This document shows positions 10,965 through 57,919 of a stretch of 64,000 bases of DNA, piece after piece. Below the pieces are notes generated by a model. It was not told the origin of the DNA, ran no database searches, and saw nothing but the letters and a program-made list of their open reading frames with translations. The position numbers and the translations under genes were made by a program. Location: assembly GCA_965285935.1 (NCBI GenBank), contig OZ260664.1:85808001-85872000 (forward strand), in the 5' to 3' direction. Source of the DNA: Ophelia neglecta (taxonomy: Eukaryota). Position 1 is the first letter of the stretch, and every line of letters starts with the position of its first letter.

Positions 10965-13324
10965 CTAGTTACCGAGGAAAGCTTGTATCTTTACACTGAT
11001 GGTATTGAATGTTGGTCTCATATCAGGGTTGTAATTCCAACAGTCGCGCATAAGTAGGTACCTATATAACATTAAAAAAATCCAGGGAGGACTTGTAATT
11101 AAACCATTACAATGCAATGCTTGTGTCCAATAAGTTTGCTTGTCCTTTGGTGTACGAGTAATAACGTTGTACATAGGCTATTCAACATGGCTGTAAATTA
11201 CATACACTTCTCTCGGGTTGAGAATGCTTTTTGGTAGAATTGCGCCTCCGACAATTTCTTTAATAGCGTCGTTGCGGTGTTTATCCTTAAGAGGCTCACA
11301 TCCTACAGAAAGATATGTTTTAACTGGGAGTCCTTAACTCGGGCAGGCATAAATCGATGTTATTTTGCATAAAATATTAGTACATAATGAAGAAGCAAGG
11401 AGGGTAAAGTGATGGGTCGGTGATGAATATCCCATAAATTAACAACTTGATGTTGATACTCAAATCAAACATTGCATATGTCTAAACTTGTTCCCTGAAA
11501 TAATCAGCAAAATTTATTGAATCACATTTTATTACTTAGGAATTGCATAAAGCTTGAATTATTTATGTCCGTTTGCCCTGATCTTATAGAACTGTACGTG
11601 AGCGATCATGTTTTTCGTTTAATGATCGGGGCATGACACAAAATTAAATCTAGGCGTATTGAGCGCGTTCAAAATAATGATTATTAATATGTCTGGTATA
11701 CAATTAGTGAATAATAATTGGGGATTTACGGAACATATTGTTTGGTCGTTAAGAAATGCTTATGCTTTAGTTCCTACCATGATTGTACAACTGCCACATG
11801 ACTACTCCAAACGCCCAAACGTCGGCCGACTGCCCGTACATACCATAGCTCAAAGTCTCCGGTGGCAACAAACCAATGGGCCATGTGGTCATCTGCAAAA
11901 CGTCGTGTGAATACAAACAGCCAACATTGTGTTGATAATGTTATTTGGGGTCGCGATTGCTTTGTTATAAGAGATTATGTATTATTTGCTGGAGACAGAT
12001 AAAGTAAATCGTGCTTCCAAGGAGTAATGGCAGGTGTAGCTGGCTTTCCGCTCAACCTTTTAACCCAAATCTGATATTATCTGATAATATGAAGCAATTT
12101 GCTATTATACTGTAGCATTGAAATGTTTTTTATTAATTATTATTTTGTTACTGTAAGTTTATATTTACTATTTTTATTTCGAGTACGCATTGTAAATTTT
12201 GCATTATGTAACAGAAGCACAATTTGGCGCAGTATCGTGTCCAGTAAGAAATTGCATTTGATTTAAATATCTGTGGCATCCTATACAATGTTAAGAAAAT
12301 TGATAATATTAATATTGTTTTATATTATTGTTTGAGTATTTATTTGTATCCAGGGGAAATTTAAAGGAAAACTGAGTCATTTTCTATTTTACGTAAAGCG
12401 GCAATGGAAACAATTTATCGTGAAAATACATTGGCTCTTCCAAACGCAAATAAGTGAAATGATTTCGTGTTACATAATTGTTTTGGAACTCACATCGGAA
12501 TCAGACTTTTCACAGTAGTGTTTCTCAACATCTTCAGAATGCCAGAATCCTCTCAGTTGCACGTTCATATGATGGGTAAGTAAAACTTTCTTCAGACATA
12601 AGTTTGGATGAAGGAAGCTAGGCTAAACGTAAAGAAGGACACAATATACTTCAGTTACCGACAAAACTATATGATTAGATAGATCTGACTTATTATGTCA
12701 ACGTACCGTATGCGTGTGGAGGAAGTCCAGTGCCATTGCAATATCCAATGACCACTTCAATATGAAACTCTGGTAGCTTTCAACGCTGATGCTATTCACG
12801 ACAAAGCTTTCCAGGTCGCAGTTAGCGGCGTATTCGTAAAAATTGTAGAGATAATCTGAAATAGAGTTATAGCAGATCTAATTGGGTACAGTTATTAATA
12901 CTGAACAGATATTTGTGTACATTACATTGGTCAGCAGAAGCATTTAAATACCTGCTGTAATGGTATATCCTACAAATGGTATGATGTATGGTGAAGGTCC
13001 GCAGTGTACACATGCTTTCAACTCACTCGTGGCCAGCTTGTACTCGACAAGATTTCCAAAAAGATCGTCTGCGAATATTATAGACACATTAAGGATTAAT
13101 TTTTACAAAACGATATTCACCTTGATTAGCTAAACACGAAAATCTACCGGTACAAGTTTTTTTCGAAAAATATGAGCATACTAACTTCTTGTTCGCTTGA
13201 CAACAGCTGACGCTTGACGTGACTTTCGGTCAGCTGCTGTCCACACCACTTTGAAAACCTCATTGCTTATTTTCTCCCCAATGAGAAATGAATCAGGGGA
13301 TATAATCAGCAGGTCCGCATCCGA
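10965..13324 (-). CDS. Tyrosine-kinase-fold (pseudokinase) domain of gene A, 7 exons
   Basis: IGEKISNEVFKVVW (Gly loop missing), AVVK, SELKA, FLHPNLCLKKVLL (HRDLAARN position), VQLRGFW (KIxDFG position), WPIGLLPPET, DVWAFG, CWNYNPDMRPTF. Confidence 0.9.
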
Positions 13325-16300
13325 CTGCATATGAGGCAACAAAACATAGCTGGATCAATTTGCCGTAACATTACTACCAAAACTAATGGAACGTCAATAA
13401 AAAGTGAGCAATTCGTTTTCGGTTCACCCTGCTCTTAGTTATTCACTTCATAATTTCTTGGTCTTTGATGCACATGATAAATACACGATAAAATTGTATA
13501 AAATTTAATTACGTACCGCTTTTGTTTCAGCCAATCCAATATAAATGGCTTCGGAAATTCTCTTCTTAGAAATCTCCAGTTTTTCATAATCATTTTCGTT
13601 ATTTTGTGCATTTCCGAGCACAACCTCAATACAAGAAAAAACATGATGGATTTGGAATATAATAGAGATTAATTACATGCCTCTAAGGTTACTGAAATTA
13701 ATCGTTCCAAACTAACATCTTAATTAAACAAGGTAATATTGTGAACATACTTCAGCAGTATTTTCGTATACTCCATCCTTCTCAGGGCAAGTGGAACTCA
13801 TATCGATTATGTCAGCATAAACCGGCTCAGCGATAGCCGACACTTCATTTATCATATGAAATAAAGAGCTAGTATTTCTCTTTGCAGGCTAAGCATGGCA
13901 TTTTTGTAAAAATACACAACACGCAAACTTGCAATATGAAATATTTGCACCCAACTCACCAGGAGGCGGTGTTTTGCGTAAATGAAGAAATAGTAAGACT
14001 AAGAATATTATGATCGCAGCCAATGCCAAACTACCAAATATACCACCAAGTATCGCTCCTATTGGAGAATCTGAAAAATACAAAATTGTCAAACAATCGT
14101 TTGGTGGCATTCCTTCTTTGCTAAATACGTAAATTAAAACCCTTCTTTTTAAAAAAATGTTCTATCCTACCACTTGTATTAGAAGCTGATGGAGCAACTC
14201 TGCCATCTTGTTCATCACTGCCACCGGAAGCTAGCCCTGCGGCTTTCAGGAATGAATCCTCGTAGACGCATAACACAAATACATTGGTCTTCTGCAGATC
14301 AAAGTTTCCATGTCCAACTACATTTCTATCGGTTATATCGGAACCGCTGATATCATCGTTGATCGTCTTCCATCCACCACCACATACAGTAGACCTTTTC
14401 CTCCGAACACCCTGAGCCTGATGACGAAGCTCCAAGACATACGCCTCTCCTTGTACGTATTCCCAGGTCAGGTTTACGTAAGATGTGGTCAGCTCCATCC
14501 ATGTAATATGTACAATCGGAGTTGCTGAAGTGAAAATAGATACACTATTAGTATTGATTATTAAAGGTGCCATAACTATGTACGGATTCTTAACAGAAAA
14601 TAATGAATGTTTGAGCTTTTGACATTTTACACTGAATTGTTATGTAGACAAAATGTCGCAAATGTTAGATAGGCAATACATATATTATTTCCACAAACGG
14701 AATTTAAGCAACAGGGACGTTGATGAATGTCGGGAAGACGATTATATTTCCGCCCTGGAGTATAGCAGGTTCACATATCGATGATCGAATTACGTCGAGT
14801 GCACTTTAAGTGGTAGCCTTACTATTGATAAAGATCCATATGATAATACAATCATTTCAATAGCCAAAGTATTTCAATAGCCAAAGTATTTATTCGTCGC
14901 ACTTTAATCAAGGTTTTCAACTTAAAATGTCCACCCTTTCAACCGTTTCGTGGCAATGAGAAAGATGTGAAACTACATCTCAAGTTGTCTAGGTATCAGG
15001 GGAAAATTCCGAATTCCATGAAAGGGAATACAATTGGCCTTTACAATAAATACATACAACTCCAAGACAATTACTGGCAAAAAAACGTAGCATGTTCTAT
15101 GACAAGTCGACTTTCTCGTAGTATTGTACCTTTCTGACTCACCTCGTGTTGTTTGCTCTAAGTTGCTAGTTTCACTTCGGTCGCGCTGTTCACCATACTG
15201 ATTGTAGGCCACAACCTCGAACACATAACTAGTAGAGTTTGTAAGATCGGACACTCTGTTGGAAATCTTGTTATTGAGTAAACATTGTGTCATTATCCGC
15301 TCTTCTATAACCAACTCGCCTTCCTCAGTGCCATACAAAATAAAGAACATTTCCTCGTCTCCGCCATTGTATCCACATGTCCAACGGAGTGTAACGCTCA
15401 CAGATGTGTATTCCAGAACTTCGAGGTTTGTTGGTGGATGAGGCGGGCCCACCTCTACTAACTCGATTTTAAAATTGACATTATACTCGGCAGCCAGGAT
15501 GCTGTTCGATGCAGTACATGTGTAATTACCAAAGTGATCGTCTGTTACGTTTTGAATGGTCACTGTACTGTCCAAATAGGTCACATGTCCTGGGATTGCT
15601 TTTCCATTGAGTTGCCAGGAAAAGGATCCAGTTGGCTTCATACATACTTTACAGTCCAGAGTGGTTGAGTTACCAACAAATGCAGCATATATCTTATCAG
15701 CATTATTGCCTGCCCAAAGCGCAAAGTCTGCATAGAGGTAAATCAATTGGTTAAACTTTTGTCGGTGCTATATCTTAACATTTTAAGCGTATTCTATGAT
15801 TGAAATGATTGTTTAGGGAGTCTATAAAAACAACTACTGCACTGAACATGATATCGAAACAATGCATATAAAATATAAACGCTCAAAGCCTTCGATAAAG
15901 ATGGTGTTTAATACATTTATTTGAAAAAGTAATACTACGAGGTTTGACATTTATGGACACAACTCACAAAGCGTCTCCAGTGTAGTCGCTTTGGATGTGT
16001 CACTCCTTATTCCGTCTGTAGCTGTACATGTGTAATCCCCGTCAAACTGGGACACGTTGTTACACGTAACCCCATTCCGAGCTTGTTGAGGGCTGAGAGT
16101 GCTCGTGCAGCCGTAAGTCATCCCATAAGGAAAGGGGCCATCGGTTGTCGGGTGCCAGGCGTGTACAAACCGGAGATCATTTGTGATGTCAGATGACCCC
16201 CACTTCCATCTTACCCCGTCCAGATCGGGTTTTGCTGTCACGGTGCAACTAATGGATATTGAGGTATCATTGACAAGAAACAGTTTTGTCTGTGGAGAGG

Positions 16301-19300
16301 TCGGTCTGGTAAACTGGGGACCAACTACAATGGAAGGAATAGACGCCCATGAACGATTACTGATACATTTTAATATTCGGTCAGATGATCTGAAAGTATC
16401 ACGATACTTGTTCTAAATTATCCTACATTTGTCATTAGCATACGTATCACAGATTAGCAACCAAATCTATTAATATTTGGTGAATGACAGGCAGCATAGC
16501 TCTTTGTCATTTCAAGTACCGTCAGCGGATTTAATAGTATAGCTAATGCCCTACTAGTCTCAATGAGTATGATCTCATGTGAGAAATATATTTGCAAAGT
16601 GCAAAAGGGTTTTTCGTGCATGTGATCAGACAACATGGTTCCTGCATGACACATAGGTCCTTATCTTCTTGAATTCTATGTGCCCTGCCTTTGGGAGGGT
16701 TTATTCGTTAGGCTCACACGACGGTTGTGGGACCAGATAAAGACCAACTACCAGCCGACTTAGCTTAAAAGGTGGTTTAAATATGAGCCTTTCATATAAT
16801 TCCTGGTACTCCCCTATTTTTGACTCCTCTGAGATGCTCTTGAGTGCTGCATATCATCATTTACCGGTCAGGTTAAAACAACATGTTCGCCTTGAGCAAG
16901 CGAGATGGGTTGACAAAAATACCAATTCTTAAAGCATTTGTGATACAGAAATACCTGCTGTCTGGTATTTCGTAGCAATCTTCGGTGGACGACTCATCGG
17001 GAACAAGTCGGTTCTAACACTCAAGTGGCCAGGCGCCTCTCGACAAGTCGGCCTCGGTGAAGACCACTCTGTTCATGGAGGGTCATACCCCCCCCCCCCA
17101 TTGAAACTGGAGATTTTAAAAATTCCAAAGAAACAGTGCATATTATTAAATGTCGGATGATGTAGTATCGAATGAATACAGTAAACAGAGGAAGGTGTGA
17201 TGGTCAAAACGCACTTGTTTCATCAAATGACACGACTTTTCTGCCTAAACACATGGTTTATACGGGCCGTACGTGTTAAGACGCAACGGCTTTTCCAGAC
17301 AATACGGGCCGTACGTTGTGAAGCACCTACTGGTTGTACAAGAAGACCGTACCACCAGTGCTTACGCTCTGTTCACAACACACGGCCCGGCTGTGAGAAA
17401 TGTAATTGACAAGTGTTTTGCACGGCTTTTAAGTAGTAGCAACGTAGTAGATCGCGCATCGGTTTACCAAGACTGATCATTATAGTAAATTACACCAATA
17501 AGTAAGTCACATTACGCGCCCGTCAAACGCCACTTTTCCCTTATCATTACTTGGTTAATGTTCACAAATTTACTGTATGGGTACTTTACCGGTGTTACAG
17601 TTTTACTTAACGTGTACGGCCTGCGGTAGACCTGTGTTGAGACAGGAAAGCCATGTTATTTGTCGAAACAACTTGAATGCGTTTGGGAGGCATTACCTTA
17701 TATAGAAGCCGGCCCTCTCTTTTTAGCCACCGTGACCGGGACGTATTGGACAAATTACATAAAACATAACCAGATGGTTAAAATCAGTAGACCTACCGCC
17801 TGTTTACATTTACAGTGGCCCCTGTGCGTACATGCACACATCTATGCACGTACGGTGACGGAGGTTTTGTACAGCATAAGTGCGTGTTCATTGTTAGTTA
17901 GCCGTGTTTGTGAGGTACAAAACGCATTTGTTCACAACGCTTTGCTCTCTAAACACACGGCTTAAATAGGGGTCGCGCACTATATGAATAATATGTACTC
18001 AAATGTACACTGCAGGGGCGCTTCCTGTGCAAATGAATCATTCATTTTTTTTAGTAATTATCATAGCAGCTGGTCATTTGATTTATTATAATATCTTGTT
18101 CTGTAATTTGAGACAAAAAATAAAGTTTTTCTTCAAGAAATCAGTGAAATTGCATTTTTGTGGTAAAACTTGCTATAATAAGAAGTAGATGGAACTTACA
18201 GTGTTTAAAGGGGATAAACACTTTCAATTGCATATGCTGAAAAATTGAGCTGCTGAATGTGTGTTTAAACAATTTTATCCAATTGCTTATATAATTAGCT
18301 ACAAATTCATATTAATGAGATATCCCAACGGGTGTTTTCTTTTTTTTTCTTTTTTTTACTGTGCTATAGGCTAAAATGGACGCTTATGGCAAAATTCATG
18401 CCATGTTGTAACCAAAAGGCCTAGCGACCAACACTTTTAAGTGGGTATCTGGGGATGTGATACAAGTATTCGCCCAAAGACGGCCCTGTTGTTAAGAATT
18501 TCAAACACGGCTGGTTATTAAATCAAAATTTCCATGTCTGTATGCGTACGTATTATTATTATTTTAAGTCATAAGAAAGTTGTATAAGCTGAAGGTGTAT
18601 AGGCCTAGATTTAATGAGCAGACAGAGTAAGTGAACTGTATACAGTTTGCCAGATCGGCCGAAGTGACTGCTTGACCCTCTCGGTCTGTTCCACACTAAT
18701 AATAATAAGCAAAGCATGGGCCAACACTCAGAATGCCATCCAACAATTTGTTTGTACAAACACAATTTATCAAAGAGGGTCCAAACATATAATTCTTAAG
18801 TGTTTCTTATACTTACCGATGATGTCTAGTTGAGTATCTGCCGATACTTCTGATTTGAGCCGTCCAGTATATACCAGGTTAGAAGCCTGACAAGAGTATC
18901 CTCCGGCCTGATTAATATTTATGATGGAAATTTCAAGGGAGTTCTGATTGGTATCACCAGGGGGAGGTTGTACACCAAACCAGGTAAATACGTCTGCCTC
19001 TGGGTGACCTTTATCTGCCAGGTAACACGTCAAGGTCACATTGTCTCCAGCGTACACTTTCTGGTTTGAGAGCTGGAGGACCGGACGGGACGTCGAATCT
19101 GTGAATGGACAGAAAGGGGGTTGGTGTGAACCAGGCTTTCCTCGTGTAAATTGGCAGACGGCATATTGTACACATTTAGAGGTAATATATCTCATGAACG
19201 AACCCTATCATGAGTATTTCATAAGGTTTCCAGTGTGACATAGTTCTCTACGTCATTGTGGATTACTTGCCCGTAGAAAGGGAAAGACAATTGACTCAAC

Positions 19301-22300
19301 AATTTTAGGAAATGCAGATGGTGTGAAAACACTGTGCTAACAACCCAGAAACAAGGAGCAGTGAACATATTACTAGTTTGATTTGGTATAGATTGTCTTA
19401 GTCTTGACTTTCACTTGCTAGGAATATCCTTATCCTACCTCTATCAATATTAGATCAATATTATTTGTCGTACAAAATATGAATAATATAACAGGTATGG
19501 CATTTATTTCACGATAGTAATAAATTAATATAGCCCCGACTCATTTGTAAAAGCAGTGTGTGCCCTTCCTCTCGCCTGGAACACTTGGCCAGTGAAGGCC
19601 GGTGTTTATTAGACACATCAATAACATGAGACGCTCGGTTGTCGTAGCTAACCAGGGAGTTTGTTGTGTGATTCACGATAATAGCAAATACTTCTACTTA
19701 CATTGGACGTTAAGTTGGAGCTGTTGATTTCCTGCCGCCCCGATTCCGTTCATTCCGTTACACGTGACCGTCCCACTCGCCGATTTCCTGTCTTCTAGGT
19801 CGTTATTGGCCCATGTCAGAATAGAACCAGATACAGTTAGTAGATCACAGCTCCCTCCCTGGGTGTTGGTCATGCTATTCTGTTTAAGACCGTTGTCCTG
19901 TCCTGGAGACCAGGACCACTGGACTTCAGCAGCCGGCTTGGCGCTGTACGAACACTGGACGTCTACTGTATCATTGTTCAGGACAGTTAACTCGGCAGGT
20001 AAAGGTGTATTGACCATTAATGGTGGCACTGAAATACATCAATATCTTTGCTAAATCATGAAGTTATATGTTTGTTAAACACAATTATCGAAGCTTTTAA
20101 GAAAGAACAATTACCATTGACAATAAGCTGTACAGCCGCACTCCCGCCGACTCCCACCGTGTTATAAGGTGTACATGTGTAGGTGTCTTGCTGACATTCT
20201 GATGTCACGGTCACTGACAGTGTCCCGGCGTTGGTCTCTATAACACCACCTACTGACCTTGTCCAGTTCACACTAGATACAGGATTACCGGCGTTCCACG
20301 TGTCTCCAAGGTTACACATGAGAGATGCCACAGACTCCACTACGGCGGTCACAAGGCTGCTACCTGCCGTAGCCGACCCAGGTGGGACTGGAAACCAAAG
20401 TTATACAATTGATTTTCATCTAAAATGAAACACATATTAACAACAAAACTGGAGGCATTCCGTTGACGTTACTGCCGACGCCTGAAACGTGACTTAGCTT
20501 TGCCTTAATTAGTCTCATCTAACGTAGATATTCCTAGCCAAGTCTGTAGAGACTGTGAGAATAGCAACCCTATTTCTCGGTCCAGGGCTCGAACCTTGGT
20601 GAGGACCTATTTTTGTGTTTGTACATATAACCTTACATCGAATTACGTACAGTTTTGTGTTGATTATCTCTACTTGTCAATTGCACTATTTCTTTTAGTA
20701 AATGGAGCTTTACCAGCATTTGTCAAACTGAATGTGAAGCCTGTACGTCGCGCATAGTATGTGTTGCGGTGGTTTGGGCGGGTCGTTTCGTCATTCGTGT
20801 CATAGGTTCCCCGAACTGCGACAGCCGACGTTATTTTGATAAAAGGCGATAACATTGCATCCAGCGGGTAAAACATCAAAGACACACGAAACCGTGGACA
20901 AAACAACGTGAACGTCGAGGGGTATTCCAGTAGGTATTAGGCATGTTAGTTTTCAGGAAGCGCCTATATTTTGGGAGGATGACAATCGGGCTATTGGAAT
21001 AATAATATTATAGATTATTGGTTCTATATCAGTAAGCCCCTAATCTTTAAAATGTCTTCTGTTTTGAAACATACCGGGCAGCTTTACACACCGCGCGATA
21101 TGATTTTGATTACTCTATATACGTTCTTACCGTGTGTGATACAAACCTGAAAACAGTCCGAGCTGTAGTGAACAGGGATTATATTCCTAAAACAATGTCC
21201 CCGCGGTGACGGACGTAGCCACAAAAGTATCGCGATCTGCACTTTTCATAGAAGTTAAATGAAGACCGTACAAGTAAGGCGAAGTATGTAACAGGCGCAC
21301 GTCCTAGATTGGTGTAAACGTGTGGGTGTCCCCTGGCTTGGAAGTCCCCCTTGCTACATTTACTAATCATTACCCCCACTGGGACCTCTCGCTCTTTAAA
21401 CACTAGTATTTGAAATCTGACGGGGTATAAATCTTAGTAATCAGGGATCCGGCCTGCAAATAGTGATTTATTACGTCTCCCGGTGGCAAAACAGTTTTCT
21501 TGGGGCATTGTTATCCTATAGGTTTTGAGTTCTGGGACTGGTTAACCTTTTAAACCTAACACTCATTCACTCGATCTATTACCTTCAATTCCATTTGGGA
21601 ATGTACGTAAGATTAAAACTTCGCCACTTTGACATTAGATGGCCAGTGAAAAGCCATATGAAATATATCACTCTGTAATTAACAATATGTTATCCATCAG
21701 AAACCGTGAATTCCCGAAACGTTCATCTTAAAAACTTTATACATGCTGAAATATAGCAACAATCTTTATAAGGGTTCTTAATCAAAAAGCAGAACAGCCT
21801 GTCTAGCGGCACCTAGAGACAGTACAAAGAAGGAAAAGGGGTAATGTGAAATAAAGATTGGATTATTGTCGTATCTATAGGCATAAGAAAAGTCCCACTT
21901 ATGTCAGAGTATTTTTCAGGGCATGGCTTTACATGAAGGGCCCAAAGTTCACTTCTTGTGACATGAAAGGGTGTGTTTTTTATGGTTATTGTCTCCCCAG
22001 ATCCTTTTGTCTGTAAAAAGAGGCAGATCAATACATATTTAGAAACAGATTCATCCAGATTCAGGCATATTTTGTTTCACTATTATCGCTGTTTGTCAGG
22101 TTTCGGTGGATCTATGGATCCATTGTTGTCGCATAGTTACATGCATGGGTCTATATTTCGCACATCCCGTCACAACAGGCCCTATACGCCCCTCCCCACC
22201 ACCACAACCACTGCGACCGACCCCAACACCCACAGGGATCATCCCTCTCCCGTGTTCACCCTTCCCACTCCTTGCCCTCCTCCTTACTTCAGTACCCCCC

Positions 22301-46795: not shown

Positions 46796-47029
46796 TCTTT
46801 AATGTCCTGATGAACATACAGGTCTTGATCTACTCTTTCGCTCTATGCAGGTGTGCATAGTGCCTGAATAATGTTGAACTGTCGACTATTGCGCGTTGCG
46901 TTCTTGGGCGCGCATTTGGATAAACAGCCTGAACGTTATTTTGAAATCTCTAAACAGAAATAGTTGAGAACTAACTGTTTGTAGAAGATAATATTACTTC
47001 TCAATCTGTTCTCTCTTGACAGGATAACC
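46796..47029. promoter_or_regulatory. Candidate bidirectional promoter / 5'UTR region between head-to-head genes B and C
   Basis: Only 234 bp separate the two divergent start codons. Promoter activity is inferred from geometry, not from a recognised motif. Confidence 0.5.
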
Positions 47030-50000
47030 ATGATTAACGCGCTCGCCTGTTTGATGTGTCTATTGAGATTACTAAGTTCAGCGGGTAAGACACAACTTTC
47101 AAATTCATTATTATATATCGAGCCAAAGAAAATTCTATATGGGGCTATATGTCTCATTCGTTATTCAATTCTAGGTATTATACATTAATCAATTCTATCA
47201 TTAACTTAACTGCAGCAAGCTCGGTCGGCGTCGTATGGAGCTCAGAGTATTATGTCTTGGTGGGAGACAACATCAGCCTATCTTGCTCTATGAACATACA
47301 AGGCGCTTATCGCAAAGCCCAGTGGAATACAGACGCTGTAAATAATCAAGCCTGTTCAATGTGTCATAATCCCGATTCACAATACATCACAGCTATGGGA
47401 AATCCGTGTGATACAAGTCTTAGATACCGAGACGGGGGTTGTGATGGCAATAGAACCTGGATCACCGGGACACTGGATGTGACTATAGACCGATCAGACA
47501 TCAGGGAATGGGTGTGTGTAGGACCTTCGGTCCAAAATCAGGCATCAGAGTCGCTCACAATCCACGAATTCAGTAAGTTTATCTATTGCATGTTTTTTAT
47601 TTAGGATGCATATATAATGGTTGTATGCCATAAATTGCCCTGCCGAATAAACCGCGGTATTTGCATGACCAGCCATGGAATGTAATGTAAGTCCGATTTC
47701 TTCTCCATCTCGAATAAGAATAATACGAGACAGATGTAAAGAACAAAGGGTTGAGATTTCGTTTTGCCAATTTTGAATATATGCTAAAGGATCGTACATT
47801 GCATACAAAGGCGATCGTTTAAACACACATTCGCCTCCTTACTGGGCTCAGTGCTGTCCACTTGCAGAAGAAGTTAGTAGTTTGAAACTTAACTTGCTTT
47901 GGGCATAAATCACTGCCAGCATGTGAGCCTGCGAGCATCTAACCAGTGATATAGCCCATAGTTATAGGTAAGAGGTATGGCTCATTCAAGCAACAGTTAC
48001 ACCGTTATGCTAAAGGCTGGTTTTTAATTTCATCATTAAAATTGTTTAACTAAAATGCAAAATCGGTCAGCTGGGTTTGATTGGAATAGGTTCATGCTGT
48101 CTTAAACAATTCCTGATAACGCAATTCTCTTAAGTCAAATCATAAACGATAAGAACTTTTTTTTTCCAATTTTTTTTGGAATGTTCACCAGGTTCACCCC
48201 ACCTAAAATTCCCAAAAGTCTGTTCTTAAAGCTGTAAGTAAAATTTTGAGTGTGTATAAAGTGACCCCATTCGGTTAAAAATTTGAAAAGCCCTCTCCAC
48301 CCAATATGAGTGGTATAATCCCATATCGGGAAAAAAATATATATGCGCTTCAAATTGACAAGGGCGAAAAAGGGCGTACGCAACGATTTTAAGAAAATAT
48401 TTTAATGCTCTGGACGGTAAACTATAATAACTTAGTAATTCATTGCCGACTCACACAGAATATACAGTTCTAGGGAACTGAACTGTATCATTACCTTTTT
48501 ACATACGAATGCCCTGAGAACTAGGTGTTATTTGGAACATGCCATTCAGTTTGGCATAGAAGTTCTCTGTCAGCAATTTTGCTTAGACTGTGGTACTGTT
48601 ATTTGAAATGTATTAACTTACCAAACATATATATGTACATGGCTTCATTGTAGTGTCAACAAGGAAAGACGTGCAATTGATTTTAATTGAGCTTATATTT
48701 CCTGGCTATCAATCCTGTTTAACTTCTCTGAACCCAAATTCAAAGTATAATGATAAAGGATGTACTGGTATGATTTTAATCGGCGAGGCAGGGGAGGGTT
48801 GGAAGGAAGGGTGTAGAAAGAGCATAAAAGTTTTGGGGCCCAGATTCCTGCTCCCGAGAGATGTTTTGCACTCAATGAGTAAAGACAAAGTTATCTTTAA
48901 ATGCATTTTGCACTTAAAAGGTTACATTTCTCCACATTGAGTGATATTTATGATTTGAGACACAATTTTCTCTGAATTAATGTGACAATATCCATAATGA
49001 AACGCCATTATATTTAGTAGCTGCGTAAAGCTATTAAATATTATATGTGGAAAAACACCAATTAACTAAAACACTTCCGGGAGTACGCCAAGCAGGTTGA
49101 TTGTTGGCGGGTTATACTCAGAAATGATTTATATCATTTAAGGAAGTTATGTTGCCGCTGTTCTATGTCAAGGATCATCAAGAATGCGGAAAGTTTGCTC
49201 TCACACTATAAGTGTTTTCCTCATATAAATAAAATACCCGTCTCTGGTACACCACTGTAAGATTAAAAAAATATACGTTATGTGTACCGTGTAATCGTGG
49301 TAAGTGGCTTTTTTACTTTGCGTATCGCATCAACAGGGCAGATATGAATGGAAAATGGATCAAGACGCATGACATCTCTACCCCACCCACCAGTCTCAAC
49401 GCGTAACACGTGGCAGCGAGTTCTGAATGTACTAATTACAATGGTATGCTGCCCACTTAGACCAGTAGTAATGTAATTCGAGACAGTCCGGACTGTCGGG
49501 AAAGAAACATTACGAAATTTATACAATAAAACCTTTATTGAGTCACTGATGCGACTAATATCTTGCCTAGAAATGTCAAGGCAACGTTGTTTAAATTATG
49601 AGATAAAAGCATCATTGCTACCGAATCCTTGGTTCGACCACCCATGAGCGAAGCCACAAGATAAGAGCATTTTGTTTGAGAGAATTAAATGCCTAAGCAC
49701 AAAATGTCATGTTGCCCTGGACGTCCCAACACGCATTCACGCCTAAATCTAGCCATGATTTATTTTTATTTACAGAAGCGACGTCTACTCCATCAATTGA
49801 CAACTACACCTCCAACGCCGTGCAGGTAGTGTCTGTAAGAGAAAATCAACAAAAGTCATTCACCTGTCGTGTACAGGGTGGCGCTCCTGTGCCAGTTATC
49901 ACATGGTACCAGACCCCAAACACTAACATCACAGACAGCCCCCAGCAGGACTACGGCAATGGCGGATACTCCCTACTGTTGGATATAAACATGACCCGAC

Positions 50001-53000
50001 AAAATGACGGGGTAGTGATTTACTGTGGTGTCCACCAGCCAGGGTCATCGCATTCTCAACTTTCCCAGTCTCCAAAACTTACAGCTAACGTTCTCTGTAT
50101 GTATTCAAAACCTTCCTCATCATTAAGACAACAACTTATAAAACGAAAGACTAGTGAATACCCGACTGAAAAATAATGAATAGATGACATTGCATTAAAT
50201 GGTGCACCAAGCTTTGGGGATGGAGGGGGAGTGGGGTATGGTGGGGGTCTTATTATAATGTCTATGACGCGGAAAAGTGTACGCATTAGAGCACCGCTGC
50301 CTAAACGGGGGTATAATGTGTCAGCCACACAGTATCCATTGACTGTGTCAATGGCGAGTTATGAATCACTGAATTTCATTGATATAACCTTGCAAGTCAT
50401 ATAGGATTAATCAAATTTAGTAACTGACACGCAATGGTGATCACAATTATTCAAAAACATTTGAACGGTTTGTTAGGAGTATGGTCGATGGAGTTTGGGT
50501 ACAGTTAATACTCACTTTGTAGACCAATGCATTAGTCAAAGCATTATGGTGGACAAATCATAGGCTTTTTTATTCATCAACTATGCTCATAATCGGTGCA
50601 AACTATAATCAAAAACTGTAAATAAAGCTCTTAAGTATCATACTAATAATGAAAATTACGAAATTAAGATTAGACTTATTAACAAATATTTATATATCGA
50701 GAGTTTAGGTAAAATCTCGTGCTCTCTCTAATTGTTTTATTTAAAGTGCACCTCAAGAGGGTGAGAACGATTTTCTGTGGTCCAATACATTTCACCGTTT
50801 CATACCTGATTTTGTTTTACTGTACCACGCTGCTTGTAGACAAACCAGATCCGGCAGTGGCCACTCAGGCTAATGTCGTCGTTACACTGGGAGACACTAA
50901 TGTGTCGCTGAGTTGCCAGGCTAACAGTCAGTGGCCAGGGAACCCTCTACCGACCTTTACCTGGACCAGGACTGGGGGCGGCTGGAGCGATAACGGACAT
51001 ACTATCCACGTGTCCGTACTGAATCCGTGTATAGACACGTATTATTGTACTCCTTCTAACAGTGAAGGTTTGGGAACACCGGCTAATGTGACCCTTGAGA
51101 TTTTAGGTGAGAACAAGGAAGAATTATTGGTGTAACCGACCATACTAATATCATGGTAACAGAACTTAATATGTCGTTTTGTCTTAAAGCGCCCACCGTA
51201 ACAAGCACGACAATCCAAAGCACTGTTGTAGCTGTAAACACCGACGATAGCTGGATGGTGAGATGTGGCTTTAAGGGACTACCTGCGCCTACTGTCAGCG
51301 TTACAGGACCCGGAATTGGTAATATATATCAGGTGGTCCATGGATCTCCCAGCCTCACCGTGGATTGTTATCAGGAATCTTCCGTCATCTTGAAATGGAA
51401 GGCGGTAGACCAAAACACCAGGAAGGCCGGAAGTGCGCGAATTACATGTACAGGAAGAAATGGTGTTGGTTCAGTACCGGGTAGTCATCACTTCAACATC
51501 GACGTGCAATGTAAATACCTCTTGTTATACAAGAACTTGGCGAGAAATGTTATTTGCTCTTCTGGTTTATATCGAAACGACCCCAGTAGAGGAAAGAAAT
51601 ATACTTATTTTTTCAATGTAAAGCAATAGAATAATTGACTTATTAGATAAACCAGGAGCAGCATCCTCTGAATCGTTGTCACCTGTTAGTGTGCACCAGA
51701 CGGCGACACTGCACTGTTTTATGGCTGGAGACACTGAAGGAAACCCAATATCCAAATTCAACTGGACACGGAAAAATAATTCTACATGGCAGGTTTTAAA
51801 CAATAATGGGAGCCTGCTTCTTCCAATAACAGACATGACTTTTGAAGACGAATACTACTGTACTCCATGGAATATCCGCGGAGCAGGGCAGAAGGCGACG
51901 ATCCAACTTACATTTAAAGGTTAGAGATTGGGCTACCTGAAGAAGATTAACTATAAAAGTCCGCCAGTCTGGTGCTTTTAGATCACCAGGCATATAGTTC
52001 GAACATTCTATAGTTAATGTATTTAGCTACCCAAGGACTATACTGCAGTTGCTCTAGTAACTAAAAAACACTTGCGCCGGATAAATATTTTTAGCTATCT
52101 TAATTTATCGCTAGTTGATACATCGAATTTATGTCTATACCTCATAATGTAGAATGGGCGTTACGATATTATTATGTTCTTTTGAGAAAATCTTCCACAG
52201 GCACTCCATTGGCTGTCATAATAGGAGGAACAATCGCGGCTGTTATATTTGCAGCCACCATAGTCATCGTTTTAGTTGTGCTGCGCAAATATAGGAAAGG
52301 AAGTCAAAATGGTAAGTTATGATTTTGTATTGATCCAAACATCATTTCGATCCTACTGCCTTTCGAATCAGTCATATTTTCGTTTTCGATATGTGTATGT
52401 CCATTTCATGCGTTATTGGTCTTGGCAGATTATCTAGAACCAGTAAAAAGACCATGCGACGACATCGATGGCATTGACTCCGTCTACAGCGTCATCGATG
52501 ATATTGATGTGATCCCCACCAACCTCCATCCGGATGCCCAGGATAACGTATATTTGACCATGTCATTTTTATATCAATCCGGCATTTTTTTCTCTGTAGC
52601 GTTGAACCTGTAATGCTTAAGTGATGCTAGTGGATTTATTTTATATCATGTTAACCCAAATAAACATTGGATTGAGTGAACTGTTTTAGAGCACAGTATC
52701 CTGTCGCAAAGGGAATTTCGCTGTTTTCCCTCGCCCGAAAATAATAATTGACACCTAGATACGTGTTTTTGAAAGGTATCCAAATAATACGTCTAAAAAG
52801 GCTTAACCATTGAAAAGGAATGATGTGTGGATTCCGATAATCCAACTACCAACAGTTCTATATCTGCTCAAGTAGATATACAATGCCAATAGGCTGAAAC
52901 ATCTGTCCAGATAATCGGAAACCAGTCGGATGTCTGATTGGGCGGTCCTGTTAAATTAATTATTAACATATTCAAATAGTTCCATTTTCTACACCTTGAA

Positions 53001-56000
53001 ATTGTTTGCCATGGAGAACAAGTTCCTAGAACGGTTTTTGACTAACTTCTGTTCCTGCTAACACTGAACAAGAAGAGCCATATTCCAGGGAGAGCCACAA
53101 TAGCCATTGTCAGGGTAAAATAATGGAGCAGACTTTATGATTTTTTTTTCAGTCCGCGGGGATTGCAGTACATTGTTGTAAATAAAGTTGTTCGTCTGTC
53201 AATTTTCCAATTTTCTTCTTTTGGACACTAATCTTCTCATTGGAAAATGACGACACTCATTTTGATGACCCTCACTTTCATAATAACAAATAATATAATT
53301 GATTGAATAGCTAGCGTCTCTATATTCATCAGAATATATAAAAGAGCAAACCTATAATTAGTACCCCCAAAAAATGAAAGGATGAGGTTTTTTTTATAAT
53401 AAATGAAGATTTTGGTAGGATTGTATTTTATTGTAAAACGTATGAAGCGAATATGGACTGGCAGATGAATCTATGTATTCAAACAATTCAGTTGGCGCAA
53501 TGACCTGTTGTCATTATTTGTATAATGTGCTTCGAAAGTTAATTTTTTATTAAATATATTCTCGCTTTACAATGCCCCCCATGATAGCAAAATATATACA
53601 AAAAAGTGTCTTAATGATTCATCCTATTCATATAATAAGCAGATTGTCAAGAACACTTCAGCTGATTACGACTTATTGGACAAGGAAGCTAATAGACTGT
53701 CCAGGAATTTTTACGCCACCCTAGAGAACAAGGATAACAGTGTGGTACGCCACTTATACTATTATGTCATATATCATACTATTAACACGAATAGCACCAG
53801 TGTTTTCGAATTATCATATGTCATTCCATCAGGAATGAAATTGAATTTTCATGTCATAGGAGAATTTCAATTTTGTGTAACAGGATGCGCCTGCGGATTC
53901 TTTTATCGTCCCACCTGGCGCGTTCAGCTTGGGGAAACATTTACGTAAAGGAGCTTTCAAAGTCATTTGGTCAAGTGACAACTATAGTTCGAATGCTGCT
54001 GTTGTGAACCGAATAAATAGTGCGGTTTGATATAATTTCATCTCTAAACAATATTGGCCAGCAATGATACTGACATTTTTTAAGGCTAGCCGTACCCCAT
54101 TCACTTTCGCATTTTTCGTTACTTAATAAAACACAAGTTAAAGGGTTTAATCATTCACTTCGCCTGCGTATTCACGAAACACACAATACATTAAAATGAA
54201 TTACAAATGTGCCCAAACACACGGATGTTGTCCTCAATCATCGGAAATATAACTTTCCCAACAAGCCGACGATCCACAAAATTATAAAACCTATATGATA
54301 CGTAAATTAACTACATAATCTAATGTATTTCCCATGTTTCTTTATTCAGACAACCCGAGTGATGAGGACTACTTAATAGCATTTAATGGTTTGAAAGCAT
54401 TGTTAAAATGTGAATCCTCACTTTTTGTCAGTCGGTTAATCGGATTCACTATTACAAAGGGTATTGATAATGTTATTCATCTGCATTTTTTTCTACTTTA
54501 ATTTTGGTGGTTGAAGTTCGGTTCAAGAAAATTGTTTCCCTTTTCTTTCGTGCAGAGTTTCTATATGTTATGTCGGAATTCGCAAGCGAAGGTAGCCTTC
54601 ACAAGTTTGTCAAAACAGCACCGAATGTGTCCTCGTACGCATCCCATATACTGAAATGGTCAGGGAACATTGCTCAAGCCTTTGATTACCTTCATTCCGA
54701 ATCCGTAAGTATATTCAGGTAAATCATGTTGACTTATAATCACGGTATCTTGTGGCGCACTGGTATCTTTAATACATTTAAATTCTTAATAATATGTATT
54801 GTGTCCAAACTTTAAAAATAATAGTAATAAATGGTCATAGATAGTTTTCTTGGGCGGATGGGTACGGCTATACTATTATAAAATCTGTTTATGTAAATAC
54901 AAACTATCATCTATAAAAACATGTATTCTATTGTAGCAACCATTCCTCCATCCATGTTTATCATTATATCAAATACTGTTGGATTCTCATCTACGAGCCA
55001 AACTAAAAGGATTTTGGCTGGCTCAAGATGTGGTTGCTAAATATGCCAAGAAAGACGAGGTAAGGATCGAAATTTAGCGTCTGCATTCTTGTACCCCCCC
55101 CCCCTCAAGGTATTTCCCCTTCCCCACGTTATTTCCCTTCCCCGGCTGTGTCGAATAGCTAGACGAAAAGAGTTGAGGTAAATTGGTTACTAATCATCGG
55201 AGCCTATTTTTTTTGTATACGCTGTTTAATTTGAATATACACGCTATGTGTCAGGTTATTCCTATCATGTTTGTGTTTTTAGATCACAAAATGGCCAGTC
55301 CGTCACCTGCCCCCTGAAACTTTACTCTATGGTGTATACAACCAAGCATCCGACGTCTGGGCATACGGTATCCTGATTTGGCAAATATATAACAACGGTA
55401 AGACGGCATAATGTTTAATGCGAATTAAACAGGTCTGCGTTTGAATTTCAATAGGACGGATTAGAAAACCTACTTATATTCAAACGTAAACGGAGGAAGG
55501 TCATTCATATTAGCGCCAACTTAGAAAATATATGTGCGTGCGTGTAGTAGGCAGACCAAATGAATATGTATGCCCGTTTTAACAAATCTGCTGTATAACA
55601 ATAAGACGACATTCACAAGCGCATTTATTTACGAATATGTATTGGAATAACGGAAACTCATTCCTTTTTGGCATACTGGAAAACCTGATACGAAATTCGA
55701 AGGAAATACGAGATACACAGATACGAAAAATTAAGATTGAGTTGGATTATGACAGGGTAAGGGGTAGGGTTAAGCTAGCAACCTAACTAAACCATAACTT
55801 ACTTTATCCTTCACCCTAACCCTAACCTAGTCCATATGGCTACGTTTTAAACACCTCGTATCTCGTATCTGCGTCTCGTATCTGGTATTTCGTATCAGCT
55901 TTTCCAGTATGCCTTCCTTTTTTTATTGGTGAACTACAGTGTGATGTATTTATTTAGGGAGTATTCCTTATCATGCCACTAAAGAAAGTGAAGTTGTCAA

Positions 56001-56294
56001 GGCAATATGCGATGGTGATGTAATGGATATGGGAGAAGGGTTTCCAATGTCATTGTAAGTGTTCTACGAATTGTCAATAGTTCTGACCACATTTATGTCA
56101 CAATATGTTGTATTCAAATGTTGCTTAGATGTACGTGGGACAACGCCCTGAGAACGGGAGCTGCTATTAAATTTGGCTCTTTTTCTTATAGTGAAATGTA
56201 TATTCGAGTTTGTTGGAGATACGAGCAGGACAAAAGACCGAGTTTTTCTAAAATAACGAACAAATTGAAGTCGCTGACCTACAGAATGAAATGA
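47030..56294 (+). CDS. Gene C: Ig receptor tyrosine-kinase-like pseudokinase (SP, 5 Ig, TM, ITIM-like and ITAM-like motifs, dead TK domain), about 920 aa, 16 coding exons; paralog of gene A
   Basis: Exons 47030-47084 (signal MINALACLMCLLRLLSSA), 47216-47572 (V-type Ig), 49776-50096, 50840-51106, 51190-51510, 51647-51919 (Ig), 52201-52311 (TM LAVIIGGTIAAVIFAATIVIVLVVL), 52429-52547, 53643-53744 (juxtamembrane), 53884-54019, 54350-54460, 54556-54704, 54937-55059, 55283-55397, 55958-56054, 56192-56294 (kinase: NIAQAFDYLH, PPET, SDVWAYGILIWQI, CWRYEQDKRPSF). Cytoplasmic intron positions and phases match gene A. Confidence 0.9.
53884..56294 (+). CDS. Tyrosine-kinase-fold (pseudokinase) domain of gene C, 7 exons
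   Basis: LGKHLRKGAFKVIW (Gly loop missing), AVVN (beta3 Lys lost), NGLKA (alphaC Glu lost), FLHPCLSLYQILL, AKLKGFW, WPVRHLPPET, DVWAYG, CWRYEQDKRPSF. Confidence 0.9.
55670..55913. mobile_element. MITE (non-autonomous DNA transposon, Mutator/MULE-like) with 9-bp TSD in an intron of gene C
   Basis: TIRs GGCATACTGGAAAACCTGATACGAAAT and ATTTCGTATCAGCTTTTCCAGTATGCC (1 mismatch in 27). Perfect TTCCTTTTT duplication at 55661-55669 and 55914-55922. Internal inverted GATACGA and telomere-like TAGGGT/ACCCTA repeats. Confidence 0.88.
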
Positions 56295-57919
56295 AAACAA
56301 ATGTGAAGCTTGCAAGCACGCAATTTCAGGATCAGACTTTTTTAAAGCAATCAGCAGGATATCATATGTCCGTATTCGTGCATATAAGTGTTCCATTTAT
56401 GTATCATACATGGTAACATCGTTTTTTTTTCTATAAAACAAACACAGTGCTTTAAATTACCATGTGGCTCATACTTTATTCTCGGTGTGTGAATTATATT
56501 TTGCTGTGTTATATATCTCACAATCTTAGTACCAATTTTATATTCATACATATTCACTTCCTGGAACGTCCGGTCATTGCATATTCAGATATGCATACAT
56601 TGGAGTGACATTTAAAGTAATTATTTACCTTTTTCGAGTATGATCAGTTTTTATCTGGGCACAGTGTCAACGTTGTTTATTTAGGGTCGCATTATATGTT
56701 CATTAATTGTCGTATTTAATTATTCATTGTTTACTTCTTATCATGCTAGTGCAAATGCAGAAATAATGTTGACATTGTAATATTTCAGCATGAATATATC
56801 CATAAAGTTGGATACAAAAATTATATTCGTCTGCAAGAAAATTGTAGTATTTGACTGTGATATGAGCTGAAGGCTCTTACAGAAATATTCCTACATTAAT
56901 GCTGTACCCTTCATATATGCGTACTAATTGCTACGTCGATGAAGATGCGGAGGTCGTGCACATTTTATTCTTTACGCCAATGTATACTTCCTAAATATAC
57001 ACAACATTTATTGTATTATGTTGATGTGGTGACAAATAATAGATTGTATTTTTGCTGGTTTAATAGTAATAGTAATAGATAATAAAGTAATAGATAATAG
57101 CCTTTTACTAAGCTATTACAAAGGGTACTTTTGTCGTTTTACTTGAGCATTTAATATTTGGCTAATTAAACCAACCAATTAATTGTCAAAGTAATGGAAG
57201 GCATTAAACATGTTTGGAAAATCTCTCACCTGTACTGATACTGTACAAAATATGATTTTGCCTATACCAAATTAATTTCTCCCCAAAAATGTCTGTATTT
57301 ATTAACATGCTTCACACAATAAAATCATGCTTTCCTAATAGAGTGTATTTTAGGGGTCTAAAAATGTTATTGCAAGGCAAACTCTCCCCTTCATGGTGTT
57401 AACCAGGCTGTTTATCGAGAACTGTCTTGCCATGAGACTGTCTGAATGTATTCAATCTAACAGTGGTCTGTGTTTTGTTTATAATCCTTTAACAATGGTG
57501 TACTGTCTCAATTGGATTTAACCAGACTATCACAGTAGCAGAGTTGAATTATTTTTTGTCCCTTGAGATGGCCAAGGTTGGAGTCACTGACAACCTACCC
57601 CTGTCTCCCTGATTGCGGTTAAAGTCACTTAAAGATGGCTAGGATTATCCTGATTGGCTTGTTAGTATTTTAGCCAATTCATTCATATATACCAACGAAT
57701 ACTGAGATTCTTAATCAGTGTCCTGAAGTTTTCCCAACTACAAGATCAACATGTCTGTGTGGGCACACTTTGATGCCATTCAAAAATGTCCTGTAATAAC
57801 TTTAAATGAGACCTTTTTTTAAGTTAGACTTATTATGTGTGTCAAGAGTTTTGTATCTTTGTTCTTTGGCAAAATAAAGTTTCCAAATCTGAACAGTTAT
57901 ATGCGTAAATTTATTGTGA

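What the first reader, a model, noticed from the sequence alone, without database searches (positions are those of the whole stretch)
53884..55059. Gene C pseudokinase has lost all canonical catalytic residues yet shares the FLHP-x-L and GFW replacements with gene A
Besides HRD to HPC, DFG to GFW and the missing Gly loop, both partners of the beta3-alphaC salt bridge are gone (AVVK to AVVN; SELKA to NGLKA). The replacement motifs are conserved between two old paralogs. Inactivation therefore predates the duplication and the new residues appear to be under selection. GFW is a usable family signature.
Basis: partly seen in the sequence, partly recalled or inferred. Interest (0 to 1): 0.75.

Follow-up and report, generated by a model that had tools for sequence, protein, structure and literature searches.

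The report
Expanded family of dead-kinase Ig receptors
Gene C is one of at least 29 clustered genes in this invertebrate genome for cell-surface immunoglobulin-type receptors whose inner kinase domain has lost its catalytic residues but is still kept by selection, probably as a signalling scaffold rather than an enzyme.

Summary
Gene C (+ strand, seven kinase-like exons, 53884-56291) and gene A (- strand, 13321-10968) share all six intron phases. Both carry LHPxL in place of HRDL and GFW in place of DFG. Gene C has also lost the beta3 Lys (AVVN) and the alphaC Glu (NGLKA), and keeps one of three Gly-loop glycines.

The signature reaches far beyond two genes. 29 exon-4 copies in this genome carry LH[P/H/S]xL...GFW, and 27 of them lie within 1.7 Mb. 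They form four subtypes (C 3, R 14, H 8, A 4). G, F and W are invariant despite synonymous codon changes. The former catalytic-Asp position varies (C/R/S/K/N). Nineteen more exons elsewhere carry LHPxL...GF[M/L], giving a 48-member superfamily.

Inactivation is therefore old. The loss of Lys and Glu is specific to the three C-type copies. Within-subtype dN/dS is about 0.3, and synonymous sites between A and C are saturated.

A profile search of 1.84 billion protein representatives found no GFW relative, and four literature searches found no description.

The exons were never joined, so no structure was modelled. No RNA run exists.

My reading: a lineage-specific family of Ig/FN3 receptor pseudokinases descended from tyrosine kinases.

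The parts
53667..53723 (+). Gene C juxtamembrane exon with YDLL-x11-YATL (ITAM-like), just upstream of the kinase-like domain
   Evidence: the same motif lies in front of E1 in C-type 3/3, A-type 4/4, H-type 6/8 and the one R-type locus read
53884..54020 (+). Gene C E1: beta1-beta3 equivalent, degraded Gly loop (R-K-G-A-F-K), AVVN in place of the beta3 Lys motif; phase-1 donor
   Evidence: no kinase hit on its own
54350..54460 (+). Gene C E2: alphaC-beta4/5 equivalent, NGLKA (Glu replaced by Gly)
54556..54704 (+). Gene C E3: hinge to alphaE
   Evidence: PF07714 positions 76-121, 19.8 bits, below cut-off
54937..55059 (+). Gene C E4: catalytic-loop and DFG equivalents, FLHPCLSLYQ ... GFW
55283..55397 (+). 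Gene C E5: P+1 loop to alphaF (PVRHLPPE ... SDVW)
   Evidence: (PF07714 164-199, 38.1 bits)
55958..56054 (+). Gene C E6: alphaF-alphaH equivalent
   Evidence: no Pfam hit on its own
56192..56294 (+). Gene C E7: alphaH-alphaI (CW...RPSF) and stop codon
   Evidence: PF07714 236-258, 16.3 bits
49697..52320 (+). Gene C ectodomain Ig exons and transmembrane exon
   Evidence: open frames, hydrophobic stretch then RKYRK; C2-set_2, Ig_2, Ig_3, I-set hits
10968..13321 (-). Gene A kinase-like exons E1-E7 (E4 at 12622-12494: FLHPNLCLKK ... GFW; beta3 Lys and alphaC Glu kept)
13532..13588 (-). Gene A ITAM-like YEKL-x11-YIGL
14124..20038 (-). Gene A membrane-proximal ectodomain exons (Ig, Ig+FN3) and transmembrane exon
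   Evidence: (Ig_3, I-set, fn3 35.7 bits)

Best explanation
Gene C and gene A belong to a tandemly expanded, apparently lineage-specific family of single-pass receptors. Each has immunoglobulin (and, in gene A and the R-type locus read, fibronectin-III) domains outside the cell. Inside it has a short juxtamembrane exon with two YxxL tyrosine motifs 11 residues apart, followed by a kinase-fold domain descended from a tyrosine kinase. That domain cannot catalyse phosphotransfer. The catalytic Asp and the Mg-binding Asp are gone in every member, the Gly-rich loop is degraded, and gene C's subtype has also lost the Lys-Glu pair. The following is shown: the anatomy, the size of the family, the age of the inactivation, and purifying selection on the dead domain with invariant G-F-W. 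The rest is inferred. The domain persists as a folded scaffold. The His of HRD and the Phe of DFG, which are the regulatory-spine residues, are invariant, and the Gly of DFG is always replaced by a bulky hydrophobic residue (W, M or L). This would hold the start of the activation segment in one conformation. Signalling would run through phosphorylation of the YxxL pair by a separate Src-type kinase, followed by recruitment of a tandem-SH2 (Syk/Shark-type) kinase. The pseudokinase would serve as a dimerisation or docking module, or as a cage for the juxtamembrane tyrosines.
For: Architecture. Kinase fold in colinear exons. Motif mapping. Family size: 29 GFW exons among 32 matches, and 48 exons of at least 59 bits with nothing weaker down to E=0.01. 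Tyrosine-kinase ancestry: the E5 signature P[VI]R[WH]L[PA]PE gives only tyrosine kinases among the best 60 PDB sequences. The distant GFM type keeps LAA in the catalytic loop and the activation-loop Trp. PMC8662651 (passage read) names the AAR motif and that Trp as tyrosine-kinase-specific. Selection: dN/dS is 0.33 (A), 0.32 (C), 0.29 (H), 0.28 (R) and 0.23 for C versus R. Invariant residues show synonymous codon variation. Exon divergence is 4.7-4.9% against 7.1-7.3% in introns between C-type copies, Fisher p 0.017 and 0.043. The former catalytic-Asp position varies (C, R, S, K, N; also H and Y in the sister groups), so no new catalytic base is conserved. The YxxL-x11-YxxL motif is conserved in front of E1 in all four subtypes.
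Against: No RNA run holds the locus, so expression and splicing are unproven. No structure could be modelled because the exons were not joined. The roles assigned to W, H and F come from general kinase knowledge, not from data on these proteins. At least 3 of 29 copies are broken: L028 has stops, L018 has a frameshift in E5, and L016 has a disrupted E5. Part of the family is therefore decaying. The dN/dS pairs are not independent, and gene conversion between cassettes (97% against 90-91% identity blocks) can mimic constraint. E1 and E2 are not recognisable as kinase on their own. E4's best solved match is RIPK2, a TKL kinase and not a tyrosine kinase.
Confidence: 0.7

Rival explanations
1. The copies are decaying relics of once-active receptor kinases and have no present function. 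The shared motifs simply reflect descent from one already dead ancestor.
For: Several copies carry stops or frameshifts. No RNA evidence exists. Recent segmental duplication (90-97% nucleotide identity including introns) means that many copies are young.
Against: A and C are saturated at synonymous sites (pS 0.85), yet they keep open exons, all six intron phases and 9 invariant E4 residues. dN/dS is about 0.3 in every subtype. G, F and W are invariant across 29 copies with synonymous variation. Exons diverge less than introns.
Confidence: 0.1
2. The domain is an atypical but active kinase that uses relocated catalytic residues, as WNK-type kinases do.
For: The A, H and R types keep the beta3 Lys. 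A and H keep the alphaC Glu. H keeps the catalytic-loop Asn.
Against: The catalytic-base position is not conserved (C/R/S/K/N). The DFG Asp is Gly in 48 of 48 exons. The Gly loop keeps at most 1 of 3 glycines. Gene C lacks all six canonical residues.
Confidence: 0.05
3. It is a divergent member of an already described receptor pseudokinase family (PTK7/CCK4, RYK, ROR, EphA10/EphB6).
For: PTK7 is an Ig-only receptor with a pseudokinase (recalled, and named as a pseudokinase family in PMC8662651). EphA10 also has Gly at the DFG Asp position (GFG) and His at the catalytic-loop Asn (Table 1 of PMC7586955), as the GFM type does here.
Against: No PTK7, RYK or Eph chain is among the best 60 PDB sequences for E4 or E5. 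ROR1 appears only as one generic hit at 36 bits. EphA10 and EphB6 keep HR and an intact Gly loop, while this family has HP/HH and a degraded loop. The exons tested contain no ephrin-binding, Frizzled or WIF domain. Those families are single-copy and conserved, whereas this one has 48 clustered copies. The profile search of 1.84 billion representatives found no relative.
Confidence: 0.1
4. The domain descends from a TKL (RIPK-like) Ser/Thr kinase and not from a tyrosine kinase.
For: The E4 profile's best solved matches are RIPK2, RIPK3 and RIPK4 (20-22 bits). The H-type PPLLHHKL resembles the RIPK2 PPLLHHDL. All 9 library hits are TKL or TK kinases.
Against: E5 gives only tyrosine kinases among its best 60 matches. 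The distant GFM type keeps LAA and PVRW, which are tyrosine-kinase-specific constraints, and its only solved matches are MET (not significant). The architecture is that of a receptor.
Confidence: 0.15

Closest known systems
PTK7 / CCK4 / Off-track receptor pseudokinases
   Same: Single-pass receptor with an Ig-domain ectodomain and an intracellular tyrosine-kinase-derived pseudokinase that signals without catalysis. PMC8662651 names CCK4 as a pseudokinase family. The domain architecture is recalled.
   Different: PTK7 is a conserved, essentially single-copy gene, and its changed motifs differ (recalled: DFG changed to ALG, HRD-type loop largely kept). Here the motifs are HP/HH-x and GFW, some members have FN3 domains, there is an ITAM-like juxtamembrane exon, and 29-48 copies are clustered. 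No PTK7 chain is among the best 60 solved matches.
EphA10 and EphB6 (vertebrate Eph pseudokinases)
   Same: These are receptor tyrosine pseudokinases lacking the beta3 Lys, HRD Asp and DFG Asp. EphA10 has Gly at the DFG Asp position (GFG) and His at the catalytic Asn, as in the GFM type here. Juxtamembrane tyrosines serve as SH2 docking sites in EphB6 (PMC7586955, passages and Table 1).
   Different: The Eph pseudokinases keep an intact Gly loop and HR, and EphB6 binds nucleotide. They have an ephrin-binding ectodomain and a SAM tail, and each is a single gene. Here the Gly loop is degraded, Pro or His replaces Arg, and Trp replaces the DFG Gly. The resemblance is best read as convergence.
ITAM-bearing receptors of the Draper/CED-1 type and vertebrate immunoreceptor gene clusters (KIR/LILR/FcR)
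   Same: A YxxL-x11-YxxL spacing in the cytoplasmic part (the Draper comparison comes from earlier scan note s1-739886 and from recall). Multigene tandem clusters of IgSF receptors.
   Different: Those receptors have no kinase-fold domain. Here the tyrosine motif sits directly in front of a conserved dead kinase domain.
RIPK2 catalytic loop
   Same: It is the best solved-structure match of the E4 profile (PPLLHHDLKTQNILLD...ADFG).
   Different: RIPK2 is an active cytoplasmic TKL kinase. The match is 27 residues at 22 bits, and the other exons point to tyrosine kinases.

Membership tests
Protein kinase fold, Pfam PF07714 (PK_Tyr_Ser-Thr) | Significant match to the profile | tested here: met
   E5 of gene C scores 38.1 bits and E5 of gene A 32.6 bits against a cut-off of 23.1. 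E3 and E7 match colinear parts below the cut-off. Exons were scored singly and never joined.
Pseudokinase (operational definition) | Loss of at least one of the beta3 Lys, HRD Asp and DFG Asp | tested here: met
   The HRD Asp and DFG Asp are absent in 29 of 29 GFW exons and 19 of 19 sister exons. Gene C also lacks the Lys (by positional assignment).
Tyrosine kinase group | Catalytic-loop AAR motif and activation-loop Trp (PMC8662651) | tested here: inconclusive
   Gene C has LSL and PVRH, so neither feature is met. The H type has PIRW. The distant GFM type has LAA and PVRW. E5's best 60 solved matches are all tyrosine kinases, but E4's best match is RIPK2.
PTK7/CCK4 | Ig-only ectodomain and closest kinase-domain similarity to PTK7 | tested here: not met
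   FN3 is present in gene A and in the R type. PTK7 is absent from the best 60 matches of E4 and E5. No full-length phylogeny was possible.
EphA10/EphB6 | Ephrin-binding ectodomain, intact Gly loop, HR-x catalytic loop | tested here: not met
   The ectodomain exons tested give only Ig and fn3 hits. The Gly loop is degraded, and the loop reads HP or HH instead of HR (compared with Table 1).
ITAM-type signalling motif (Draper-like spacing) | Two YxxL/I motifs 11 residues apart in the cytoplasmic part, conserved across members | tested here: met
   Found in front of E1 in C 3/3, A 4/4, H 6/8 and R 1/1 loci read. Background is 7 stop-free six-frame hits in the whole 64-kb window, 2 of which are these motifs. 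Phosphorylation and SH2 binding are not testable here.

The most novel reading that the evidence does not exclude
The 48 genes form an invertebrate immunoreceptor system of a kind not yet described. They would be rapidly duplicating IgSF receptors in which a built-in, conformationally locked pseudokinase (GF-W/M/L) works together with a Draper-type ITAM to recruit and gate Src/Syk-type kinases. Functionally this parallels the vertebrate KIR/LILR clusters but is built on a dead receptor tyrosine kinase. The divergently paired neighbour genes could be matched partners.
Probability: 0.25. Interest if true: 0.75.

Novelty: new variant of a known kind. Interest (0 to 1): 0.5.

Why it matters
Receptor pseudokinases are known as a handful of conserved single genes (PTK7, RYK, ROR, EphA10/B6, ErbB3). 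This is a large, clustered, fast-duplicating family in which the dead domain has been kept for a very long time, with its own invariant replacement motif, directly behind a conserved ITAM-like motif. If expressed, it offers three things: a natural series of pseudokinases at different stages of degradation (H, then A, then R, then C); a test of what a Trp at the DFG-Gly position does to the fold; and a candidate recognition-receptor family in a poorly studied phylum.

Tried and rejected
(1) I searched a profile of E4 (A1, 14 of the 29 copies, chosen to cover all four subtypes) against 1.84 billion representatives. It gave 9 hits at E<=0.001. None has GFW or HPxL, and all but one (P0006, a repeat protein) are ordinary TK or TKL kinases. 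The library evidently lacks this genome's own copies too, so the blank says little about close relatives that have not been sequenced. The wider GF[M/L] superfamily was not searched there because the cap is one job.

(2) Profiles of E1 and E2 against the PDB, and E1 against P0002 by hhalign, gave no kinase match. The N-lobe assignments could not be confirmed by sequence search.

(3) I tried to classify the domain by solved structures, but the results conflict. E5 is generically tyrosine kinase, E4 points to RIPK2 and MET, and no subfamily can be named.

(4) The ESM Atlas with E4 returned only short kinase-fragment clusters (score 0.94, recognition below the stated threshold). It is a lead only.

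(5) The look-up of sequencing runs listed three runs of one study, none on record as RNA. I therefore did not use read laying, because contigs of DNA runs cannot show expression or splicing.

(6) Literature. Searches were searches whose listings I read. No listed paper combines GFW with pseudokinase (0 occurrences of GFW in the 15 listed). I read passages of PMC8662651 and of PMC7586955, including its Table 1. PMC6997932, the pseudokinase survey by Kwon et al., is not held, so its family list is known to me only from recall. Supplementary files were not opened and could list lineage-specific families.

(7) The search for homologous proteins was not used. Its length window excludes full-length receptors for exon-sized queries, and it draws on the same collection already searched exhaustively in (1).

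(8) I considered and dropped a comparison of selection on the ectodomain versus the kinase domain between C-type copies. The block at 49683-52084 is 97% identical including its introns, against 90-91% in the flanks. This points to gene conversion, which would confound the comparison.
Full report
OBSERVATION. The interval 53884-55059 is the first four of seven short, GT-AG-bounded exons of a kinase-like domain on the + strand. The exons are E1 53884-54020, E2 54350-54460, E3 54556-54704, E4 54937-55059, E5 55283-55397, E6 55958-56054 and E7 56192-56291, followed by a stop codon. Upstream lie Ig-domain exons (49.7-51.9 kb; Pfam C2-set_2, Ig_2, Ig_3 and I-set), a transmembrane exon near 52.2 kb and a small exon encoding YDLL-x11-YATL (53667-53723). 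Gene A on the minus strand has the same seven exons (13321-10968) behind Ig and Ig+FN3 exons. All six intron phases (1,1,0,0,1,2) agree between the two genes.

Gene C has FLHPCL...GFW, AVVN and NGLKA. Gene A has FLHPNL...GFW, AVVK and SELKA.

MAPPING TO KINASE MOTIFS. Exons were analysed singly.

- Pfam PF07714 matches E3 (profile positions 76-121, 19.8 bits), E5 (164-199, 38.1 bits against a cut-off of 23.1) and E7 (236-258, 16.3 bits) of gene C. The corresponding exons of gene A match likewise, and in colinear order. This leaves E4 on the stretch that holds HRD and DFG.
- A profile of E4 from 14 paralogs aligns to RIPK2 (22 bits) with the x of HPxL on the HRD Asp and GFW on DFG. A distant member aligns the same way to MET, but without significance.
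- A weak hhalign (E=0.036) places the G of NGLKA on the alphaC Glu of a tyrosine kinase.
- E1 and E2 alone find no kinase. The Gly-loop and beta3-Lys assignments therefore rest on position, on the pattern F-x-[LIV]-G...[FY]-x-V-x-W...V-[VM]-K, and on comparison among paralogs.
- In gene C the GxGxxG equivalent reads R-K-G-A-F-K, so one of the three glycines survives.

THE FAMILY. Gene C's E4 finds 32 exons in the 762-Mb assembly. Of these, 29 carry LH[P/H/S]xL...GFW. Twenty-seven lie at contig C7 85.09-86.76 Mb, one at 82.9 Mb and one on contig C33. The four subtypes are:

| Type | Copies | Catalytic loop | beta3 | alphaC | Notes |
|---|---|---|---|---|---|
| C (gene C) | 3 | HPCLSL[Y/N]Q | Lys to Asn (3 of 3) | Glu to Gly (3 of 3) | |
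| R | 14 | HP[R/S]LCLSQ (one copy HS) | Lys kept (one locus read, L059) | Glu to Asp (5 of 5 loci where E2 was found) | |
| H | 8 | HHKLCLSN | Lys kept | Glu kept | catalytic-loop Asn and PIRW kept |
| A (gene A) | 4 | HPNLCLKK | Lys kept | Glu kept | |

The Gly loop keeps at most one glycine in every type.

Inactivation by loss of both Asp residues is therefore ancestral. Gene C's loss of the salt-bridge pair is a late, subtype-specific step.

In the 14-sequence E4 alignment the invariant residues are L4, H5, L8, L15, G25, F26, W27, D31 and V32. The former catalytic-Asp position is the most variable of the motif.

At least 3 of 29 copies are broken. L028 has stops in E1 and E2, L018 has E5 running into stops, and L016 has a disrupted start of E5. 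In L007, L013 and L021, E5 was not found within the 1.5-kb flank.

SELECTION. I used Nei-Gojobori counts on E3, E4 and E5, summed exon by exon.

- Within-type dN/dS is 0.33 (A, 18 exon pairs), 0.32 (C, 9), 0.29 (H, 71) and 0.28 (R, 156).
- C versus R gives 0.23, with dS near 1.
- A against every other type is saturated at synonymous sites (pS 0.83-0.85) with pN 0.33-0.37. The A/C split is therefore old.
- The invariant G is encoded by GGA (21) or GGG (8) and F by TTC (26) or TTT (3). The invariant Leu positions use three or four codons.
- Between the three C-type copies, kinase-domain exons differ at 4.7-4.9% of sites and the intervening introns at 7.1-7.3% (Fisher p 0.017 and 0.043).

Two caveats apply. 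The pairs are not phylogenetically independent. The cassettes also show mosaic identity (97% across 49683-52084 against 90-91% elsewhere), which suggests gene conversion.

WIDER SUPERFAMILY. A distant trio at C7 24.1 Mb has LHPCLAAHH...GFM. Searching with it, and then with a mixed profile, gives 48 exons of at least 59 bits and nothing weaker down to E=0.01. These are the 29 GFW exons plus 19 with LHPxL...GF[M/L], located at C7 13.5, 19.2-19.4, 24.1, 28.7-28.9 and 70.5 Mb, on C12 and on C70.

Across 11 representatives L, H, L, G and F are invariant and P is nearly so. The third DFG position is always a large hydrophobic residue (W, M or L).

The GFM gene that I read is again an Ig receptor, with a transmembrane segment, two YxxL motifs (13 residues apart), a beta3 Lys (IVMK), PVRWLAPE and CW...RPTF. 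Its LAA and its activation-loop Trp are the constraints that PMC8662651 (passage read) gives as specific to tyrosine kinases. Together with the all-tyrosine-kinase top list for E5, this favours a tyrosine-kinase origin. The RIPK2 match of E4 keeps a TKL origin open.

OUTSIDE THIS GENOME.
- The E4 profile against 1.84 billion cluster representatives gave 9 hits at E<=0.001, none with the signature. That library does not contain this genome's own copies, so lineages without deposited proteins are invisible to it.
- The ESM Atlas sees E4 only as a kinase fragment.
- Four literature searches listed nothing on a GFW or HPxL pseudokinase, or on an Ig-ITAM-pseudokinase receptor family.
- The main pseudokinase survey (PMC6997932) is not held, and supplements were closed. 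A listing there cannot be excluded.
- No RNA run holds the locus.

HOW IT LIKELY WORKS. Shown here: a receptor architecture; a kinase fold whose C-lobe signatures (SDVW, CW...RP[ST]F) and regulatory-spine residues (His of HRD, Phe of DFG) are conserved; the absence of every residue needed to bind Mg-ATP and transfer phosphate; and a conserved YxxL-x11-YxxL exon directly in front of the domain in all four subtypes. The last point agrees with the earlier scan note s1-739886.

Inferred: the domain is a non-catalytic scaffold. A bulky residue where DFG needs a flexible Gly, and Pro or His where RD kinases read activation-loop phosphate, would fix the activation segment. The receptor would signal when another kinase phosphorylates the YxxL pair, and perhaps also the nearly invariant activation-loop Tyr (Y36). 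Tandem-SH2 kinases would then bind. The pseudokinase would dimerise, dock partners, or cage the juxtamembrane tyrosines, as juxtamembrane regions do in Eph-type receptors (general knowledge; PMC7586955 passages).

COMPARISON AND NOVELTY. The family works like the known receptor pseudokinases but fails the membership tests for PTK7 and EphA10/B6, and no subfamily can be assigned. The resemblance of the GFM type to EphA10 (Gly at the DFG Asp, His at the catalytic Asn; Table 1) is best read as convergence. The new elements are the motif set, the ITAM-pseudokinase pairing and the scale of the expansion. I rate it a new variant of a known kind, of moderate interest. The score is limited by the lack of expression data, of a structure and of cross-species evidence.

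Noticed in passing
window 46500-56400 versus L064/L065/L002/L003: The three C-type cassette copies are 90-91% identical over most of the gene but 97% identical across 49683-52084, which covers the Ig exons with their introns. This mosaic suggests gene conversion between cassettes.
   Followed up: partly
G000 C7 85.74-86.06 Mb (L001-L003, L019, L023, L029): A-type and C-type genes alternate with a period of about 122-124 kb (C at 85.743, A at 85.820, C at 85.863, A at 85.945, C at 85.987, A at 86.063 Mb). The whole window-sized cassette has been segmentally duplicated.
   Followed up: partly
L062:1585-2777 (G000 C7 about 24163584-24164776): Long open frames just downstream of a GFM-type receptor gene look like a reverse-transcriptase/LINE-type element. 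I did not run them against Pfam.
   Followed up: no
L063:20-199 (G000 C7 24152019-24152198): An open frame between two GFM-type genes reads like an intact kinase Gly loop (G-A-G-D-F-G-E-V). It may be an exon of an active kinase gene lying among the pseudokinase genes.
   Followed up: no
L053 (G000 C1 110891329-110891445, minus strand): A single 110-residue open frame holds HRDLAARN, DFG and PVRWMAPE together. This is an apparently active receptor-type tyrosine kinase with a different exon structure from the family.
   Followed up: no
L018, L020-L022, L025-L028 (H type): The H-type catalytic loop PPLLHHKL is nearly identical to the RIPK2 PPLLHHDL, although the rest of the domain looks tyrosine-kinase-like. 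Whether this is convergence or a clue to origin is unresolved.
   Followed up: partly
I saw it but did not examine it.
   Followed up: no
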